A stretch of 64,000 bases of DNA from Euprymna scolopes (Eukaryota): assembly GCA_053919585.1 (NCBI GenBank), contig CM132795.1; one strand, given 5' to 3'. Below are positions 16,213-52,363 of the stretch, piece by piece. The position numbers and the translations under genes were made by a program. How positions within the stretch are numbered: position 1 is the stretch's first letter; the number at the start of each line of letters is the position of its first letter. The notes beneath the pieces were generated by a model. That model searched no databases. It was not told the DNA's origin and saw only the letters and a list, made by a program, of their open reading frames with translations.

Positions 16213-16848
16213 TCATGCCAGATGGGGATCAGAGCGTTGATGATGTAAAAATAGGAGCTTGGTTTTAGATGCATTAAAAGTAACCAGCCACCTCCTCCCC
16301 CCACTGTACCACGCGCTCAATATCAGAGGAAAGAGAATCGGAGAGAAATTTTCATTTACGGCCTTTGATGTTGTGCCATAGATGGTCGTGTAATCAGCAT
16401 AGATGTCAAAGAATGATTTAAGTATGTGTTTTGGGAGATCATTGATGTATATCAGGAAAAGAGTTGGGTCTAGGATGGCCCCCTGAGGAACCCAATCATT
16501 AATATTGAGGGCCTCTGATTTATGCCCATCGACCACTACACTTATGAGCCTATCAGAGAGAAATGATTTTATGATCGAGACAACATTTCTAGTTATACCG
16601 TAGCTGGAAATCTTGTGAAGTAGGTCCTTATGCCATACCTTATCAAAGGTCTTTGATATGCCAAGAGCAATTGCCCTAGAGAGGAAGCCTTTGTCAAGAG
16701 ATTCGCTTATCATATGATATATAACAGTTAGCACATCTGCTGTAGATCTGGCAGAACGGAAACCATATTGCATGTGACTAAGAAGGTTATTTCTTCTGAG
16801 GTAATTGACTACTTCTCTATTTAATTTGGATTTCAGCAGCTTACTCAT
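16213..16848 (-). pseudogene. Reverse transcriptase domain of the LINE
   Basis: 211-aa ORF with RT motifs; the catalytic YADD is altered to YADY. Confidence 0.9.
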
Positions 16849-17511
16849 GACACACAGGAGACTTATTGGTCCGTACTGAGAGGGAGAGGACTTATCATCT
16901 GAATTCTTAAATACAGGGCATACTGATTAGGTTTTCCAGGGTGTTGGGAAGCACTTCTCTTTAAGGCAACGCTTAAAGTGTGTTGTAAGTATGGGGGCAA
17001 GTTCTGGGTGAAGCTTTTTCAGCACAATGATTTGAATGCCGTCAGGACCAGTTGCTTTACTGAAATCAAGGTTCTTTATAAGCTTGGCGACATCACGCAC
17101 ATATATTTGTATGTTGCAGAGCTTGTTATCCGTTATAGGAGGAAATACGGAGAGTTGATGGCCTTCTTCGCTTACGGTAGACTTAGCTATTGGAAAAAAA
17201 GTTCGGCCTTATCTGATGCTGACTAGATGACCTCAGGTCCATTGATTATGGTTGGGATAGAACGCACCCTTCTGTTCAGGATCCTGTTTGCTATCATGTT
17301 GGTAGTTATGGAAAAAGTGATTTTTGTGCGCGATGACAGCAGCACATTCTGGGGAGAACCATGTCTGGCTGTTAGGTTTTTGTTGGAATTTTTTGGATGG
17401 CATAAATCGGTCTATGCCTCCAATTAGCATTCGCTCAGGTCTTATAATATGGAGGGCACAGCCTTTTTAAACATGGAATGCAGTGGTAGATCGGATATTA
17501 GTGTTCGGAAG

Positions 17512-18327
17512 CTATCCCGGTAGAGTATCGATATACAATAAGGTGGAGAGATACATCTCCAGACTTATTGCATTTCGTTTTTTTATCTTAACTGATACAA
17601 CTGCGTGGTCGGAAGATCCCAGAGGAGACAGAAAGGAACCGGAACATAGCTCAGGGAAAGTTGTGAGAAAAAGGTCTAGAAGGCTAGCATACTGACCGGA
17701 AGTATCGGGCACTCGGGTGGATTCGTGGACAATCTAGGTGAGGTCAGAGGAAATGGCAAACGCATGACAGAACCTCCTCTCATCATCTGTCTTGTTAGAG
17801 TGGGTCAACCATTCCGCATTGTGGACATTGAAGTGTCCACAAATGTGGATGTTAGCTGAAGGGTGAGCACACAGGATATGGTCAATTTTTTCAGATATGT
17901 TATTAAGGATAGTAACTCCGCTGTTGTGGGAGCGATAGAGAGCAAATATAAATGCAGTGGTGTAAGCAAGTGCAACCCGAAAGCACATATAAGATAAATC
18001 ATGGCCTTCTCTGGAGATATCCCTACCACACGGAAAGCCGTCTTTAATGTAGGCACATATTCCATGTCCATGGCGATCTTGGGGGTCACATGTAGATGTT
18101 AAGTTAGAGTATCTATTAATTATGAATGCGTCAAGGGAAGTGGTCGGTCTAATGCCGGTTTCGTTTAGTAAGAATATGTCTGGTTTCGTCTCCTGTAATT
18201 GGGTATCAACCTCTGGAAGGTTGGAACGGAGACCCCTGATGTTGGAGAAGGAGACCTGATAGTAGGGGTCTACGTTGGAGGATGGGGTTCTAGGTTTACA
18301 CGTGTTATTTTTCTGGAGGTATTTCAT
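17512..18327 (-). pseudogene. Apurinic-like endonuclease domain of the LINE
   Basis: ORFs 17734-18426 and 17512-17712 carry APE motifs in the correct order; likely start is MKYLQK at 18327. Confidence 0.85.
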
Positions 18328-19033
18328 GTTGAAGATTGGAATTTGTGGAACAGGTCGACAGACTTTGTTAGAGCAGGACAGACGGAGAAGGTAAGAGAGA
18401 AAAATGGCAATACAGCTATATATCATTATGTATTCATTAATCTTAGTGTTATATAATTTTCTAGGGTGAATTTATAAAAAATATGATAAGTTGTTTTTAT
18501 TTTATAGAATTTGAACAACAAAAAAAGAACGAAATCTGCTGAAGAAAAAAAAATTGTGATGGGGTGCTTCTACAGAATTTGAACCGAGGTTTGATGATAT
18601 TTTGCTTATTTTTTTTTAGAGCAACGTACACATAATGTAAAACTGGTTCAAAATTTGTTTGGTTCGATTAAATTCTGTAGCAGCATCTAAAATTTATTTT
18701 TATTAATTGGAGTACTATTCCGATGTAAGCTGTGATATTTGAAACAATTCAGCGAATACTTCAACGTTACGTGCTCGAGCGAATCTTTTAAAGAATCTAC
18801 TATTTCTACGGCAATCGATACATAATTATAAACCGAACCATTATCTTTCTATTTTGGAACAAGCTCCTTCCTAGATGATCCATTAGAAGAACTGGCAAAA
18901 CCATGTAAGGATAATGACCAAGATAATGATGATATTCCGAACAATTATAAACGTTTAACATACCCAATATTAAACATAATAAAATTACTATTGAATCGCA
19001 CCTCGCATAGCACATTCTCCCATTTCATCTAAA

Positions 19034-33500: not shown

Positions 33501-33881
33501 TGTAGAGCAACTGTGTTTATTCAAAATATGCAGATAATGTTTAATTGCAATACTATACTGTTGATGAGAAATGAATACCTTAATTAAATTTGCTCAACAT
33601 TTTATTTAATTGGTTAATAACGGTATGGCATTGGTAAGGTCTTTTACTTTGAATCCTATATGATGGCACGTAAACATATACATATTTTTAAATCACGATT
33701 CTGTAATAATATATACGAAATTCATTTAAATCAAAATATATTAAAGCGTTTTTTTTCTACCCCTGAGCAAGTCGTCACCTTCATCGCTAGTAGTTAATCT
33801 ATGATTAATTATATAGTAATACATGCAGAAATCAAAATATAATGTTAAGCGTACTGTACGAACAGACAAAGCCTCTAATTA

Positions 33882-33947
<66 letters not shown>

Positions 33948-34072
33948 TACTTAATTTAGCTGAAATAATGCGAAGCTCGCGATTTGTTTACAAACAAACG
34001 TTTGAGCCCTCTACGAGTAGCGGACGGATGTTTATTTAAATAATCGTTCGGACAGGTTAATTTCGGCCACCG

Positions 34073-34143
34073 ATTCCGTAGTCAAGGGGTAGGACTGCCG
34101 ACTGTCATCACGACAGTTCTAGGTTCGATCCTCGGCTTGGGAG
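34073..34143 (+). promoter_or_regulatory. tRNA-like (Asp-GTC-like) internal Pol III promoter head; second copy at about 34394-34464
   Basis: A-box-like GTAGTCAAGGGGT, anticodon-loop-like CTGTCA, B-box GGTTCGATCC, ends GGGAG. Acceptor stem is poor, so it is not a functional tRNA. Confidence 0.75.
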
Positions 34144-34148
34144 AGGTG

Positions 34149-34209
34149 TTAGTCTAGCGGCACTGATGAGTTGTGAAACAACGAAACAGGTCTGTATGTC
34201 GATGACTAA
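34149..34209 (+). ncRNA. Type I hammerhead ribozyme, intact (copy 1)
   Basis: TTAGTC-TAG-CGGCA | CTGATGA (34163-34169) | GTTG-TGAAA-CAAC stem II | GAAA-CAG-GT-CTG-TA (stem III, GUA cleavage triplet, cut after 34196) | TGTCG-AT-GACTAA closes stem I. Confidence 0.92.
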
Positions 34210-34469
34210 AATATATTTTATAAAGCTCCCCTCTTTGGTAGAGCACTCTCGTAAATTATCTTACTCGCTACTTAATTTAGCTGAAATAATGCGAAGCTCG
34301 CGATTTGTTTACAAACAAACGTTTGAGCCCTCTACGAGTAGCGGACGGATTTTTATTTAAATAATCGTTCGGACAGGTTAATTTCGGCCACCGATTCCGT
34401 AGTCAAGGGGTAGGACTGCCGACTGTCATCACGACGGTTCTAGGTTCGATCCTCGGCTTGGGAGAGGTG

Positions 34470-34530
34470 TTAGTCTAGCGGCACTGATGAGTTGTGAAAC
34501 AACGAAACAGGTCTGTATGTCGATGACTAA
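34470..34530 (+). ncRNA. Type I hammerhead ribozyme, intact (copy 2)
   Basis: Identical to 34149-34209; CTGATGA at 34484-34490, predicted cut after 34517. Confidence 0.92.
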
Positions 34531-34532
34531 AA

Positions 34533-34594
<62 letters not shown>

Positions 34595-34702
34595 GAACAG
34601 TTAAAACAAAATTGTATTTAAGACGATATATTTATATGTATGTATATATCGTTATATATATATATCTTTATACAAACACACACATACGCATATATATATA
34701 TT

Positions 34703-34734
<32 letters not shown>

Positions 34735-34959
34735 CAAACAGAACAAANNNNNNNNNNNNNNNNNNNNNNNNNNNNNNNNNNNNNNNNNNNNNNNNNNNNN
34801 NNNNNNNNNNNNNNNNNNNNNNNNNNNNNNNNNNNNNNNNNNNNNNNNNNNNNNNNNNNNNNNNNNNNNNNNNNNNNNNNNNNNNNNNNNNNNNNNNNNN
34901 NNNNNNNNNNNNNNNNNNNNNNNNNNNNNNNNNNNNNNTGGTCACGAATAGGCGCCTAT

Positions 34960-35620
34960 AAGGTTGACTATTATAGAAAACTGATCACATGTAATGATAG
35001 AAGATGTATCGAGACACAGGAATGGAATATTTGATCTGGTAGAACGGTGGTTTATTGAAATTGTGGGGTCTTCGATCGCGCCTGGTCCACAAAGTATGGA
35101 AATGAAACATTTAAAAAAAACATTTACAAGGGTTTTTGATATAGATGCACATAATACTACTTCGATAAGTATGTTTTAACTTAAATAGGGATGGCATAAT
35201 ACAATTGTGGGGTGTGCGTACGCGCCTGACCTCCTTAGAGTGGAAAAAGGCGCACGTTTTAATACAGACTTTTCATATCTTTCTGCGTAAGTGTACTTTG
35301 ATGATTATGTTTCAGTTTGAAGAAATATGGTTTAATAAAATAATGGGGTGTTCGTTCGAACCTGACCTCCATAGAATGGAAATATGTCAAGGTTTTTTAA
35401 TATAGATCCACAGAATATTGTGATAAGTGTTTTAGTGTGAATAGGTATGGTCTAATAAATTATGGGGTTTATCTATTTTATTTTTACTTTCATCATATTT
35501 TGCTTTGGTTTTAATACCCCCAAATTCGAAGTTATCTCTTTACAACCCTTCCTTTTCATAACCTATCGTACTTTCATAAATCAGAGTCCATTTTCAGTAG
35601 GCCGTTTTTGAACCAAGGCA
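34960..35620 (+). repeat. ~650-bp interspersed repeat with internal ~130-bp subrepeats; second copy at 45633-46315, partial inverted copy at 10410-10500
   Basis: Colinear similarity from GGTTGACTATT through TAAATCAGAGTCCATTTTC...TTTTTGAACC. Confidence 0.8.
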
Positions 35621-42696: not shown

Positions 42697-44300
42697 CTCG
42701 CCGGGATACCCAGCGTTGCCCGGAGTGGTGGGGTATTGGAGGAGGTAAATCAAAACAAAATGGAAAAGAAAGAATAAGCGAACGTAATAAATCTGCATAA
42801 ATATTAAAACTCTTTTTTAATCAGAGGAATTGTTTAAAGAAAAACAGCGAGCTAATAAAGAATAAGCAAATAAATATAAAGAAATGGTACAAATGGCTCT
42901 TTAAAAAATAAACATAAAACACAGGGAACATGAATAACAAATTTATAAAAAAAACAACGTAAAAATTGCATAAATAACGTCTGTTTCAATAGTAAAACTT
43001 TAAAAATCGAAAAAACATATATGATATCTAGGCTCGAAAAGGCAATTTTAAGAGAAACGCCGCTGCCAATATAACAACTGGTGGAAAGTTAGGTGTATTT
43101 TTTATATTTTAAATAATTCAAGATAGAATGCTTTGTGCGCATGCGTGTTTTGTTAAACTGTCATGACGAACGATCTTTTGCTAACCCTCCAGAAAAGTAG
43201 AAAAGTCTTCAGTTGAGGATGAAATGATAAATGTTTTTAGCCAAGTTTTAGATATTTGTTGTTCGAAGGATTGAGCATCAAAACGATACCGACGTAATGA
43301 ACATCCGTCGATTCTCTGGAAAATTTTAGGCAGACATACACACATACATACATTTAAACTGATCTTTTCCCTTTATACTATAGACTAGCGGGGGTACCCG
43401 GAGTTGCCCGGGTGTTTGAATGTGTGTGTGCTGTTAAATAAAAACAAACTGGGGGGTAGGATCGAACCCGAAGTCCTGAGGCGAAGTTTGAAAATAAAAT
43501 GTGAAAAAAACATGAACCGTTCGGCCAGCTAGAATGAGTTACTGAAAGATGATTAAATTCATTTAAGTAAGAACAAAATTGACAGGTTCCCGCACGGAAG
43601 TCGTAGGGGGTTTCGACAACGACGACGACGACGACGTAAGAAATAGCTATTCAGCAAAAGAGGTCAATGACCAGGTGTGTTTGTTATAAGCGAAGTAAAA
43701 AAAAAAAGGAAACATAAAAACGAACGTTAAAACTTAAGCGGGGGGCATTCAAAACATCGAAAAAAAAACACAAAACACTAACGTAAGGCAAACGAACGAT
43801 GTTAAATGTATAAATCGAAAAACCAAAAAAGAAAACAGAAATAGCCAGTTTCGATATTAAAATTTAAAAAATCGATGGGTACCCGGGTGATTTTGGGTGT
43901 CGCTAAGAATAAGCGAAGTAAAAAAAAGAAACAGAAAAACGAACGTTACGTGGACAATGGCTTAAATAATACTGGTGAAATATTTAAATTTAAAAAATCG
44001 AAAACAAAAAGACATCTCACACCACGATTCGAACCCAAAACGTTTAGATAATGAACCAACGCGCTAACCAACGGCGTTAACGCGACGTACATGAAATTTA
44101 GTCAGTTCTTCAAATATTTAAAGTAACTCAGATCATGACGTCATCTGACGCATGCGTAGAACTGGTCCTCATAACAAGGGGACGTCTTTGTTTACCCACC
44201 CTGACGGAAATTGTCATATACCGACCAATTTGTATCATTTCAGGTCCTAATGAACATCTGCAATTTGAATGCACTATACAAAAGCATGGTTGTCATTACT
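42697..44300 (-). mobile_element. Head-to-tail Helitron cluster
   Basis: Hairpin ends at about 42705-42723 and 43397-43411; minus-strand junction CTAG|TCTATAGTATAAAG at 43385/43384. The right boundary is approximate. Confidence 0.7.
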
Positions 44301-46677: not shown

Positions 46678-47076
46678 CCACTGACACGTGTTTTGTCGTC
46701 TACGACTCATCAGACTGGCAAGATTCGAAATCGGGACCGCATGGTAAGAAGCCTAAACCCTTACCCCTCGCCAATCCCGCTTAACTTTCGGACATATCGC
46801 GATTTACGTATATGTTATTTGTTTTTGTTTTTGCGATACATCTTGAATTAATTCAATTATTTACGAAAGTGCATTTTTACCTAAATGCGAGTTGGGAATA
46901 ATTTTTCATATTACCAAACTACTACCCCCACATGATGAGTGGTATATATATTATTTTAAAATATAATTTTCCACTGACACGTGTTTCGTCGTCTACGTCT
47001 TATCAGAATGGCTGAATCTAGCGAGATTCGAAATCGACCCCCCATGTTAAGAAGCCTAAACCCTTACCTCTTGTCC
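46678..47076 (-). mobile_element. Second tRNA-headed hammerhead family, two tandem copies (period 293 bp)
   Basis: Hammerheads at 46678-46718 and 46971-47011; consensus CCATT CTGATGA GTCG-TAGA-CGAC GAAA CACGTG TC AGTGG. Upstream on the minus strand: TGGCGAGGGGTAA (A box) and GATTTCGAATC (B box). Confidence 0.8.
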
Positions 47077-52172: not shown

Positions 52173-52174
<2 letters not shown>

Positions 52175-52360
52175 ACATACAGTACTGTTTCGCTGCTCAT
52201 CAGTGCGGCCTGACGGACAACTACCTCAAGTTAGCATTGAAACCCGAACGTTTGTACGGCAGTTAAGGCTTCTAACCACAACGCCATTGGCGGCTGCTCC
52301 GTGAGTCATGAGTTTAACGATGTTTTGACATCGTCCGAACAACCTCTGCTCAATTTTTTA

Positions 52361-52363
<3 letters not shown>
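52173..52363 (-). mobile_element. tRNA-headed hammerhead element (diverged relative of the 33947 family) between two (TA)n tracts
   Basis: Minus strand reads TGGCGTTGTGGTT (A box) ... GGGTTTCAATGC (degenerate B box) ... GTCAGG-CCGCA CTGATGA GCAGC GAAA CAGTACTG TA TGTGG. Hammerhead at 52173-52208 has a very short stem II. Confidence 0.8.

What the first reader, a model, noticed from the sequence alone, without database searches (positions are those of the whole stretch)
33947..34543. Young tRNA-promoter plus hammerhead ribozyme tandem element (Pol III retrozyme-like SINE)
Seen in sequence: a 321-bp unit present about 1.86 times with 2 differences, embedded in (TA)n. Each unit has tRNA-like A/B boxes followed within ~10 nt by a complete type I hammerhead: intact CUGAUGA/GAAA/GUA core, bulged stem I that could contact loop II, and near-palindromic stem III ACAGGUCUGU. 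Established: tandem hammerhead repeats define non-LTR retrozymes and Penelope pseudo-LTRs; palindromic stem III favours dimeric cleavage; Schistosoma Sm-alpha is a precedent for Pol III plus hammerhead repeats. Inference: a read-through transcript would self-cleave after 34196 and 34517, releasing an exact 321-nt monomer that could circularise and be copied by a Penelope-like RT, giving the greater-than-unit-length permuted insert seen here.
Basis: partly seen in the sequence, partly recalled or inferred. Interest (0 to 1): 0.92.

Follow-up and report, generated by a model that had tools for sequence, protein, structure and literature searches.

The report
Hammerhead-ribozyme tandem retroelement in (TA)n
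This is a very young copy of a 321-bp non-coding mobile repeat that carries an intact-looking hammerhead ribozyme and a tRNA-like promoter module; about 3,000 insertions sit in (TA)n microsatellites of a 5.9-Gb mollusc genome. It is a new member of the known "retrozyme" / Penelope-dependent class, not a new kind of element.

Summary
Window 33947-34543 is a 321-bp unit present 1.86 times, with 2 differences, flanked on both sides by (TA)n. Each unit has a complete type I hammerhead (HHR) core with helices I-III. An A-box/B-box pair at tRNA spacing lies just upstream.

No Rfam hammerhead or tRNA model reaches its gathering score, so both calls rest on motifs and architecture.

The unit is a high-copy family. 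I counted about 6,000 unit-to-unit junctions and about 3,000 identical 3' ends abutting (TA)n. Arrays run from under 1 unit to more than 10 units, with one fixed 3' end (unit position 276) and 5' ends spread around the unit. That is the signature of target-primed reverse transcription from a longer-than-unit (multimeric or circular) RNA.

The same genome holds thousands of Penelope-like elements (PLEs) with intact RT+GIY-YIG frames, and those I read also end in (TA)n. None of the eight PLE loci I read shares sequence with this unit.

Best reading: a non-LTR retrozyme-type, PLE-dependent non-autonomous element.

Not shown:
- self-cleavage
- a circular RNA
- Pol III transcription

The only T4 run lies 20 nt after the cleavage site, which conflicts with Pol III read-through. 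This scan has noted the same system repeatedly elsewhere in this genome.

The parts
33883..33946 (.). (TA)32, 5' half of the microsatellite target
   Evidence: TRF, period 2, 100% matches. Most of the other 5' flanks read are also TA-rich.
33947..34267 (+). Unit 1, complete 321 bp in this register (the 5' end of the insert is at an arbitrary point of the unit)
   Evidence: TRF. 100% match to itself and 92-100% to more than 100 scored places in the genome.
34268..34543 (+). Unit 2, positions 1-276 only. It ends at the family's fixed 3' terminus ...AAAATATATTTTATA
   Evidence: The same end at unit 276 occurs in at least 17 other arrays. 2,962 genome matches to this end followed by (TA)n.
34544..34592 (.). 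(TA)n, 3' half of the microsatellite target
   Evidence: Read directly. TRF finds a period-2 tract from 34532.
34072..34146 (+). tRNA-like module of unit 1: A-box-like motif 34079-34089, B box 34122-34132
   Evidence: A/B pair at 43-bp spacing, 4 in the window against 0.13 in shuffles. Relaxed ARAGORN cloverleaf at 34075-34143. No Rfam tRNA hit. Weak similarity to local tRNAs, z 1.9.
34393..34467 (+). tRNA-like module of unit 2: A-box-like motif 34400-34410, B box 34443-34453
34149..34209 (+). Type I hammerhead motif of unit 1. Core CUGAUGA 34163-34169, GAAA 34183-34186, predicted cut after A34196
   Evidence: Read directly. Core pattern 2 found against 0.02 expected. Hammerhead_HH9 alignment over the whole motif at 17.5 bits, E 0.057, below the gathering score of 52. 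Least variable part of the unit across 134 units.
34470..34530 (+). Type I hammerhead motif of unit 2, predicted cut after A34517
   Evidence: Identical to the first copy.
34216..34219 (+). The only T4 run of the majority unit (unit 270-273), 20 nt after the predicted cut and 3 nt before the fixed 3' end. A possible Pol III terminator. Repeated at 34537-34540.
34350..34354 (+). T5 run private to unit 2 (unit 83-87), created by the G-to-T change at 34351
   Evidence: G is the family majority at unit position 84.

Best explanation
The insert is one of about 3,000 insertions of a non-coding, non-autonomous retroelement of the metazoan 'non-LTR retrozyme' type. That type is a short tandem repeat in which every unit carries a type I hammerhead.

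Inferred mechanism:
1. An RNA longer than one unit serves as template. It is either a multimeric read-through transcript of an existing array or a circular monomer made by two hammerhead cuts and ligation.
2. A Penelope-like RT/GIY-YIG endonuclease supplied in trans nicks a (TA)n microsatellite.
3. The nick primes on the element's only AU-rich stretch (unit 262-276) and copies towards the RNA's 5' side, over one or more unit lengths, until it stops at a variable point.

This would give arrays with one fixed 3' end, scattered 5' ends and variable unit number. Here the result is 1.86 units.

The hammerhead has an intact core but a 3-bp helix III on a near-palindromic sequence. It probably cleaves only when two copies pair, that is in multimeric RNA.

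The tRNA-like A/B-box module may be an internal Pol III promoter, but this is the weakest link.

Shown here: anatomy, copy number, insertion architecture, (TA)n association, and co-residence with many intact PLEs that end in (TA)n.

Inferred only: reverse transcription by a PLE, cleavage, circularisation and promoter use.
For: - Tandem repeat and (TA)n flanks.
- Family size: 5,994 internal junctions and 2,962 3' ends followed by (TA)n, at up to 2 mismatches; reversed-pattern controls gave 0 for the internal-junction pattern and 4 for the 3'-end pattern.
- At least 17 independent arrays end at unit 276, with 5' ends at 14 different points and 1.9 to more than 10 units.
- 5' junctions are spread over three tested 15-nt windows.
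- Subfamily variants are uniform within arrays: 1.3% divergence within arrays against 3.7% between. This fits each array being copied from one template type.
- Hammerhead core and helices are present.
- The hammerhead is the least polymorphic region: 1 of 66 sites, against 26 of 255 sites over the rest of the unit; binomial p about 0.016 from the counts.
- Helices I and II show both-side changes against two other hammerhead families in the window.
- The monomer hammerhead fold is 5 kcal/mol worse than an alternative fold, while two helix III copies make a duplex of -11.4 kcal/mol.
- PLEs: 14,709 GIY-YIG candidates, many with open frames of 804-808 aa. Six of the 8 loci read end in (TA)n. RT plus a GIY-YIG motif were read in one.
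- Literature: metazoan retrozymes (PMC7229834), PLE hammerheads acting as dimers (PMC4209133), (TA)n preference of PLEs (PMC8557442), retrozymes as PLE derivatives (10.64898/2026.07.22.740005).
Against: - No Rfam hammerhead model reaches its gathering score.
- No read-level RNA data exist. Contig depth in RNA libraries could be passive transcription of about 9,000 copies, or DNA carry-over.
- The eight PLE loci read share no sequence with the unit, and their hammerhead-like motif is different. The partner is therefore circumstantial.
- (TA)n could in principle be added by the RT rather than be the target.
- Long arrays show higher-order repeats, so part of the copy number comes from DNA-level amplification.
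Confidence: 0.75

Rival explanations
1. A classical tRNA-derived SINE. Pol III starts about 10-20 nt upstream of the A box and stops at the T4 run, giving a linear RNA of about 155 nt (tRNA-like module plus hammerhead). This RNA is the mobile form. The hammerhead serves only as the 3' tail recognised by the RT, and there is no circular stage.
For: An A/B-box pair at tRNA spacing. The only T4 run lies right after the ribozyme and 3 nt before the fixed 3' end. A small cluster of 5' junctions at unit 113-119. Sm-alpha of Schistosoma is a precedent (PMC2770079).
Against: Such short copies are a minority: about 20 loci at 112-126, against about 120 and about 65 in two other windows. K-mer counts upstream of the putative start are about 80-90% of those at the tail. 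Most insertions therefore contain sequence that this RNA would lack, and multi-unit arrays are common. The A-box-like motif carries three of the seven polymorphic sites of the module.
Confidence: 0.12
2. The hammerhead is a non-cleaving relic or a purely structural RT-recognition element. Arrays arise from read-through multimeric transcripts and RT template use, with no ribozyme step and no circle.
For: The monomer hammerhead fold is not the minimum-energy fold, and helix III has 3 bp. PLE minimal hammerheads cleave poorly in vitro (PMC4209133). Insert ends do not coincide with the cleavage site. Naiad PLEs proliferate without hammerheads (PMC8557442).
Against: All core positions are intact in a family with thousands of copies. 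The hammerhead is the least variable region, and its only common variant lies in loop II. Related metazoan retrozymes do cleave and form circles (PMC7229834).
Confidence: 0.3
3. An ordinary satellite or minisatellite that spreads at the DNA level (unequal crossover, extrachromosomal circles, recombination into microsatellites), without reverse transcription.
For: Long arrays with higher-order periodicity on C5 and C16. Tandem structure.
Against: About 3,000 dispersed arrays on all large contigs share one precise 3' end while their 5' ends vary. This polarity is typical of target-primed reverse transcription. Co-resident PLEs show the same (TA)n association.
Confidence: 0.05

Closest known systems
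Metazoan non-LTR retrozymes (Cervera and de la Pena 2020, PMC7229834; Li, Clavereau and Pollet 2026 preprint, 10.64898/2026.07.22.740005)
   Same: Short (170-400 bp), low-GC tandem units, each with a type I hammerhead; no ORF, LTR, PBS or PPT; monomers, dimers and multimers dispersed in the genome; proposed mobilisation by Penelope-like elements; molluscs (Mytilus) already included.
   Different: This unit also has a tRNA-type A/B-box module next to the ribozyme, which neither paper mentions in my term searches. Here there is a sharply defined 3' end 26 nt past the cut site and a systematic (TA)n context. RNA circles are not shown here.
Sm-alpha / Sj-alpha SINE-like elements of Schistosoma (summarised in PMC2770079)
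   Same: A tRNA-derived module plus a hammerhead ribozyme in a high-copy (more than 10,000) non-autonomous repeat.
   Different: A different phylum, and no sequence comparison was made here. This family inserts as head-to-tail multimers in (TA)n, and its tRNA similarity is too degenerate for tRNA detectors, whereas Sm-alpha copies are called tRNA-Gln by tRNAscan-SE.
Pseudo-LTR minimal hammerheads of Penelope-like elements (Cervera and de la Pena 2014, PMC4209133; Craig et al. 2021, PMC8557442)
   Same: Hammerhead near the 3' end; very short or palindromic helix III that suggests action as a dimer; partial-tandem insertions; preference for (TA)n.
   Different: There is no RT/EN ORF between the repeats. 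No sequence is shared with the PLE copies read in this genome. Helix II and loop II here are canonical rather than minimal.
Newt/salamander satellite 2 and cave-cricket pDo500 hammerhead satellites (my recollection, not checked here)
   Same: Tandem units of about 330 bp with type I hammerheads that need two copies to cleave.
   Different: As I recall, those are described mainly as long satellites. Here most loci are short, polar, (TA)n-embedded arrays.

Membership tests
Hammerhead ribozyme, type I | Conserved core: C3 U4 G5 A6 N7 G8 A9, G12 A13 A14, the A15.1-U16.1 pair, H17 at the cut | tested here: met
   CUGAUGA, GAAA, A...U closing helix III and GUA, read in both units. The core pattern occurs 2 times against 0.02 expected.
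Hammerhead ribozyme, type I | Three helices around the core, with helix I open (both RNA ends in helix I) and helices II and III capped | tested here: met
   Helix I has 5 + 6 bp with an internal loop, helix II 4 bp plus a 5-nt loop, helix III 3 bp plus a 4-nt loop. The full-length alignment to the type I model HH9 follows this layout. Both-side changes keep pairs in helices I and II across three families in the window.
Hammerhead ribozyme, type I | Score at or above the Rfam gathering threshold of a hammerhead model | tested here: not met
   Best scores are 18.6 bits (Hammerhead_3, gathering score 48.5) and 17.5 bits (HH9, gathering score 52). There are no gathering-level hits in the window.
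Hammerhead ribozyme, type I | Self-cleavage at H17 | not testable with these tools
   Only assembled contigs of RNA libraries were available, with no read ends.
Metazoan non-LTR retrozyme | Tandem repeats of a short non-coding unit, with a type I hammerhead in every unit | tested here: met
   134 units from 23 loci keep the motif nearly unchanged.
Metazoan non-LTR retrozyme | Dispersed multi-copy family without an ORF, LTR, PBS or PPT | tested here: met
   About 3,000 3' ends spread across the genome's contigs. No ORF of 130 aa or more lies within 33947-34543; one nominal 140-aa TTG frame (34612-35034) begins 69 bp downstream and mostly spans an assembly gap (34748-34938), so it was not treated as a gene. 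Flanks are (TA)n, not LTRs.
Metazoan non-LTR retrozyme | Expression as unit-length circular RNA | not testable with these tools
   Contigs in polyA/oligo-dT libraries cover the unit and the unit-to-unit junction. They cannot separate circles, multimers, intronic read-through or DNA carry-over.
Metazoan non-LTR retrozyme | Sequence relationship to the pseudo-LTR or 3' end of a co-resident PLE | tested here: inconclusive
   No similarity to 8 PLE loci out of 14,709 candidates. The shared (TA)n context supports a functional link only.
tRNA-derived SINE (Pol III type 2 promoter) | A and B boxes at tRNA-like spacing | tested here: met
   A box matches 9 of 11 positions, B box 10 of 11, 43 bp apart; 4 such pairs in the window against 0.13 in shuffles.
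tRNA-derived SINE (Pol III type 2 promoter) | Recognisable tRNA homology or cloverleaf | tested here: inconclusive
   No Rfam tRNA hit at E up to 10. ARAGORN succeeds only at the 80% threshold. Alignment to local Thr/Lys tRNAs gives z 1.9, p about 0.05.
tRNA-derived SINE (Pol III type 2 promoter) | Element 5' end at the Pol III start, just upstream of the A box | tested here: not met
   The window copy starts 132 bp upstream of the A box. Genome-wide 5' junctions at unit 112-126 number about 20 loci, fewer than in the two other windows tested.
tRNA-derived SINE (Pol III type 2 promoter) | Transcription by Pol III | not testable with these tools
   No suitable data. A single T4 at unit 270-273 is compatible with it.

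The most novel reading that the evidence does not exclude
Each unit is a self-contained Pol III gene: a tRNA-type promoter, then a hammerhead, then a T4 terminator. Occasional read-through products are cut by paired hammerheads, circularised and copied by a (TA)n-specific Penelope RT. That would be a true SINE-retrozyme hybrid, currently active in a mollusc germ line, and one of several parallel families built on the same plan.
Probability: 0.2. Interest if true: 0.6.

Novelty: new member of a known kind. Interest (0 to 1): 0.4.

Why it matters
The copy is nearly identical to its family majority, and the family has thousands of polar insertions. The element was therefore probably mobile very recently.

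This genome could be a good place to test three open points of retrozyme/PLE biology:
- what the template is (circle or multimer)
- how the 3' end is chosen
- what the hammerhead is for

The fixed 3' end lies 26 nt past the cut site and inside the unit's only AU-rich stretch. This is a concrete, testable clue that priming depends on pairing with the (TA)n target, not on the ribozyme-made end.

The tRNA-like module next to the ribozyme echoes the Schistosoma Sm-alpha design in a distant phylum. That hints the combination is recurrent.

For annotation, these arrays should be masked as retroelements, not read as tRNA or ribozyme genes.

Tried and rejected
1. RNA evidence. All 24 runs found are kept as assembled contigs. 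Laying four of them showed high word depth over the unit and contigs crossing both the cut site and the unit junction, but no read ends and no circle test. This is not evidence for or against cleavage.

2. An apparent rule that exactly one unit per array, usually the last full one, carries A at unit 169. Rejected as selection bias. The loci were chosen by similarity to window unit 1, which has A at this CpG site, and each locus is centred on its best-matching unit.

3. An apparent 5'-end hot spot at unit 288-294 (5 of 14 arrays), with a supporting step in k-mer counts. Not upheld. Direct junction counts give about 65 loci there against about 120 at 26-40. The junction k-mers are undercounted because the AT stretch carries indels.

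4. Similarity of unit 277-310 to the 5' half of tRNA-Thr. The scores are within the range of shuffles, so no claim is made.

5. A hammerhead or any shared sequence between the unit and eight PLE loci. None was found. Their 3' UTRs carry a different, minimal hammerhead-like motif, read by eye only.

6. A larger unbiased sample of arrays.

7. MAFFT alignment of four hammerheads from three families misaligned the shortest one. Pair comparisons were therefore made by reading the sequences.

8. The circular monomer fold is only mildly more stable than shuffles (z -1.7).

Full report
**What is there**

Window 33947-34543 is a 321-bp unit repeated 1.86 times, with 99% matches and no indels. It sits between (TA)32 on the left and an AT-dinucleotide tract on the right.

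The two units differ at two sites:
- 34030 G vs 34351 T. The T is private to this copy and creates a T5 run.
- 34115 A vs 34436 G. This is a CpG site where G is the family majority.

Each unit therefore differs from the family majority at one site, so the copy is very young.

**The hammerhead**

Read on the + strand, each unit has:
- helix I, UUAGUC-UAG-CGGCA pairing with UGUCG-AU-GACUAA
- the core CUGAUGA
- helix II, GUUG-UGAAA-CAAC
- GAAA
- helix III, ACA-GGUC-UGU
- GUA, which predicts cleavage after 34196 and 34517

The core pattern occurs twice in the 64-kb window, both times here, against 0.02 expected.

Rfam aligns the complete type I layout (Hammerhead_HH9, 17.5 bits, E 0.057 on 191 nt). 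However, no hammerhead model comes near its gathering score, and nothing in the whole window passes any gathering score. The identification therefore rests on motif and architecture.

Three further points support it:
- Across 134 units from 23 loci, the hammerhead is the least variable part of the unit. One of 66 sites is polymorphic above 5%, against 26 of 255 sites over the rest of the unit (binomial p about 0.016).
- The single common variant lies in loop II.
- Two other hammerhead families on the minus strand of the window (46678-47076 and 52173-52363) keep helices I and II through changes on both sides, for example A-U to U-A, G-C to C-G and U-A to C-G.

The monomer hammerhead fold (-9.8 kcal/mol) is 5 kcal/mol worse than an alternative fold. 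Two copies of the near-palindromic helix III sequence form a duplex of -11.4 kcal/mol. This matches the dimer-dependent hammerheads of amphibian retrozymes and PLEs (PMC7229834, PMC4209133). Cleavage itself is untested.

**The tRNA-like module**

An A-box-like motif (34079) and a B box (34122) lie 43 bp apart. Such pairs occur 4 times in the window against 0.13 in shuffles.

The other tests are weak:
- ARAGORN finds a degenerate cloverleaf only at the 80% threshold.
- The Rfam tRNA model gives nothing.
- Similarity to local tRNA-Thr/Lys genes is marginal.

A Pol III-type promoter remnant is therefore credible, but its use is unproven.

**The family**

The genome is 5.9 Gb in 925 contigs. RNA runs labelled as mollusc hold the sequence.

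Pattern counts at up to 2 mismatches:

| Pattern | Matches |
|---|---|
| Unit-to-unit junction | 5,994 |
| Family 3' end followed by (TA)n | 2,962 |
| Unit 293-321 | 7,259 |
| Unit 40-68 | 8,290 |

Reversed-pattern controls gave 0 for the unit-to-unit junction pattern and 4 for the 3'-end pattern.

Thirty fetched loci show arrays of 1.9 to more than 10 units. At least 17 independent arrays end at unit position 276 (...AAAATATATTTTATA). Their 5' ends fall at 14 different positions, and nearly all flanks are TA-rich on both sides.

Direct counts of 5' junctions with a perfect TATATATA flank:

| Unit positions | Approximate loci |
|---|---|
| 279-293 | 65 |
| 112-126 | 20 |
| 26-40 | 120 |

The 5' ends are thus spread around the unit, with no single dominant start.

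Subfamily variants are uniform within an array: 1.3% divergence within arrays against 3.7% between. Some long arrays show higher-order periodicity, so DNA-level amplification adds to the copy number.

**Mechanism**

A fixed 3' end, scattered 5' ends, variable unit number and a microsatellite target are the marks of target-primed reverse transcription from a template longer than one unit.

The 3' end lies 26 nt past the predicted ribozyme cut, and none of the 14 resolved array 5' ends lies at the cut. A self-cleaved linear monomer was therefore not the template. A multimeric transcript or a religated circle fits.

The 3' end falls in the unit's only AU-rich stretch. This suggests priming by pairing with the nicked (TA)n target. 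That step is an inference.

**The likely partner**

A GIY-YIG search finds 14,709 candidates, many inside open frames of 804-808 aa. One frame read through shows RT motifs followed by a GIY-YIG core with the two cysteines typical of canonical PLEs.

In six of the eight loci read, the element's 3' UTR ends directly in (TA)n. Two alternative ends about 38 nt apart recall the PLE 'tail' (PMC8557442). These loci share no sequence with the 321-bp unit. The link therefore rests on the shared target and co-abundance only.

- The unit's only T4 run (unit 270-273) lies between the ribozyme and the 3' end. Pol III would be expected to stop there, giving an RNA of about 155 nt and not the read-through multimer that two cuts require.
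- Insertions starting at the expected Pol III start are the rarest class tested.
- The A-box-like motif is the most variable part of the module.

The Pol III idea is therefore kept as a minority reading.

**RNA data**

Only assembled contigs were available. They show the unit, including the cut site and the unit junction, at high word depth in polyA and oligo-dT libraries, while the unique flank (33800-33880) has depth 0. With about 9,000 genomic copies, this could be passive transcription or DNA carry-over.

**Standing**

The element matches the published class of metazoan non-LTR retrozymes, now argued to be PLE derivatives (PMC7229834; 10.64898/2026.07.22.740005). It shares the tRNA-plus-hammerhead design of Schistosoma Sm-alpha (PMC2770079). 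It is a new member of a known kind.

Earlier notes of this scan describe the same system at many other places in this genome. I used two of them to find the other hammerhead families in this window.

Noticed in passing
window 46678-47076 (minus strand): A second hammerhead family in a 293-bp tandem next to an assembly gap. One copy has G12 changed to A. The other has G8 changed to A and a broken helix II pair. Both therefore look inactive. A T-loop-like TTCGAATC lies a few nt upstream of helix I.
   Followed up: partly
window 52173-52363 (minus strand): A third hammerhead family, inserted in (TA)n on both sides. It has a perfect 10-nt palindromic helix III (ACAGUACUGU), helix II reduced to GC/GC, and the element ends 5 nt after the predicted cut.
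   Followed up: partly
L062, L064, L066, L067, L068 (G000 C33, C27, C30, C40, C19): An abundant Penelope-like family with RT plus GIY-YIG (open frames up to 808 aa elsewhere in the genome). It has a 3' UTR of about 500 nt with a minimal hammerhead-like motif, and 3' ends in (TA)n at two alternative points about 38 nt apart.
   Followed up: partly
G000:C11:1.68-2.16 Mb (L031-L060): A very large tandem tRNA gene cluster. All but one of the 62 scored tRNA hits lie there. ARAGORN tRNAs in 30 short loci, almost all Thr (TGT, AGT, CGT) and Lys (TTT).
   Followed up: no
G000:C5:30.687-30.696 Mb and C16:34.279-34.284 Mb (L002, L003, L010-L012): Long arrays of the same 321-bp unit with higher-order periodicity (6 units on C5; copies 17 units apart on C16). 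This indicates satellite-like DNA amplification on top of retroposition.
   Followed up: partly
window 16213-18426 (minus strand): A LINE remnant: an ORF with RVT_1 (E 1.2e-19) and, upstream, a weak AP-endonuclease match.
   Followed up: no
window 43468-43527 and 44035-44066 (minus strand): Two further A-box/B-box pairs at tRNA-like spacing. They are probably other tRNA-derived repeats.
   Followed up: no
genome-wide 5' junctions: Many 5'-truncated copies begin TATATATA|AGCTCGCG (unit 28-29). This echoes the internal junction TATA|AAGCTCC (unit 277-283). It could be microhomology or a proliferating truncated source, and remains unexplained.
   Followed up: no
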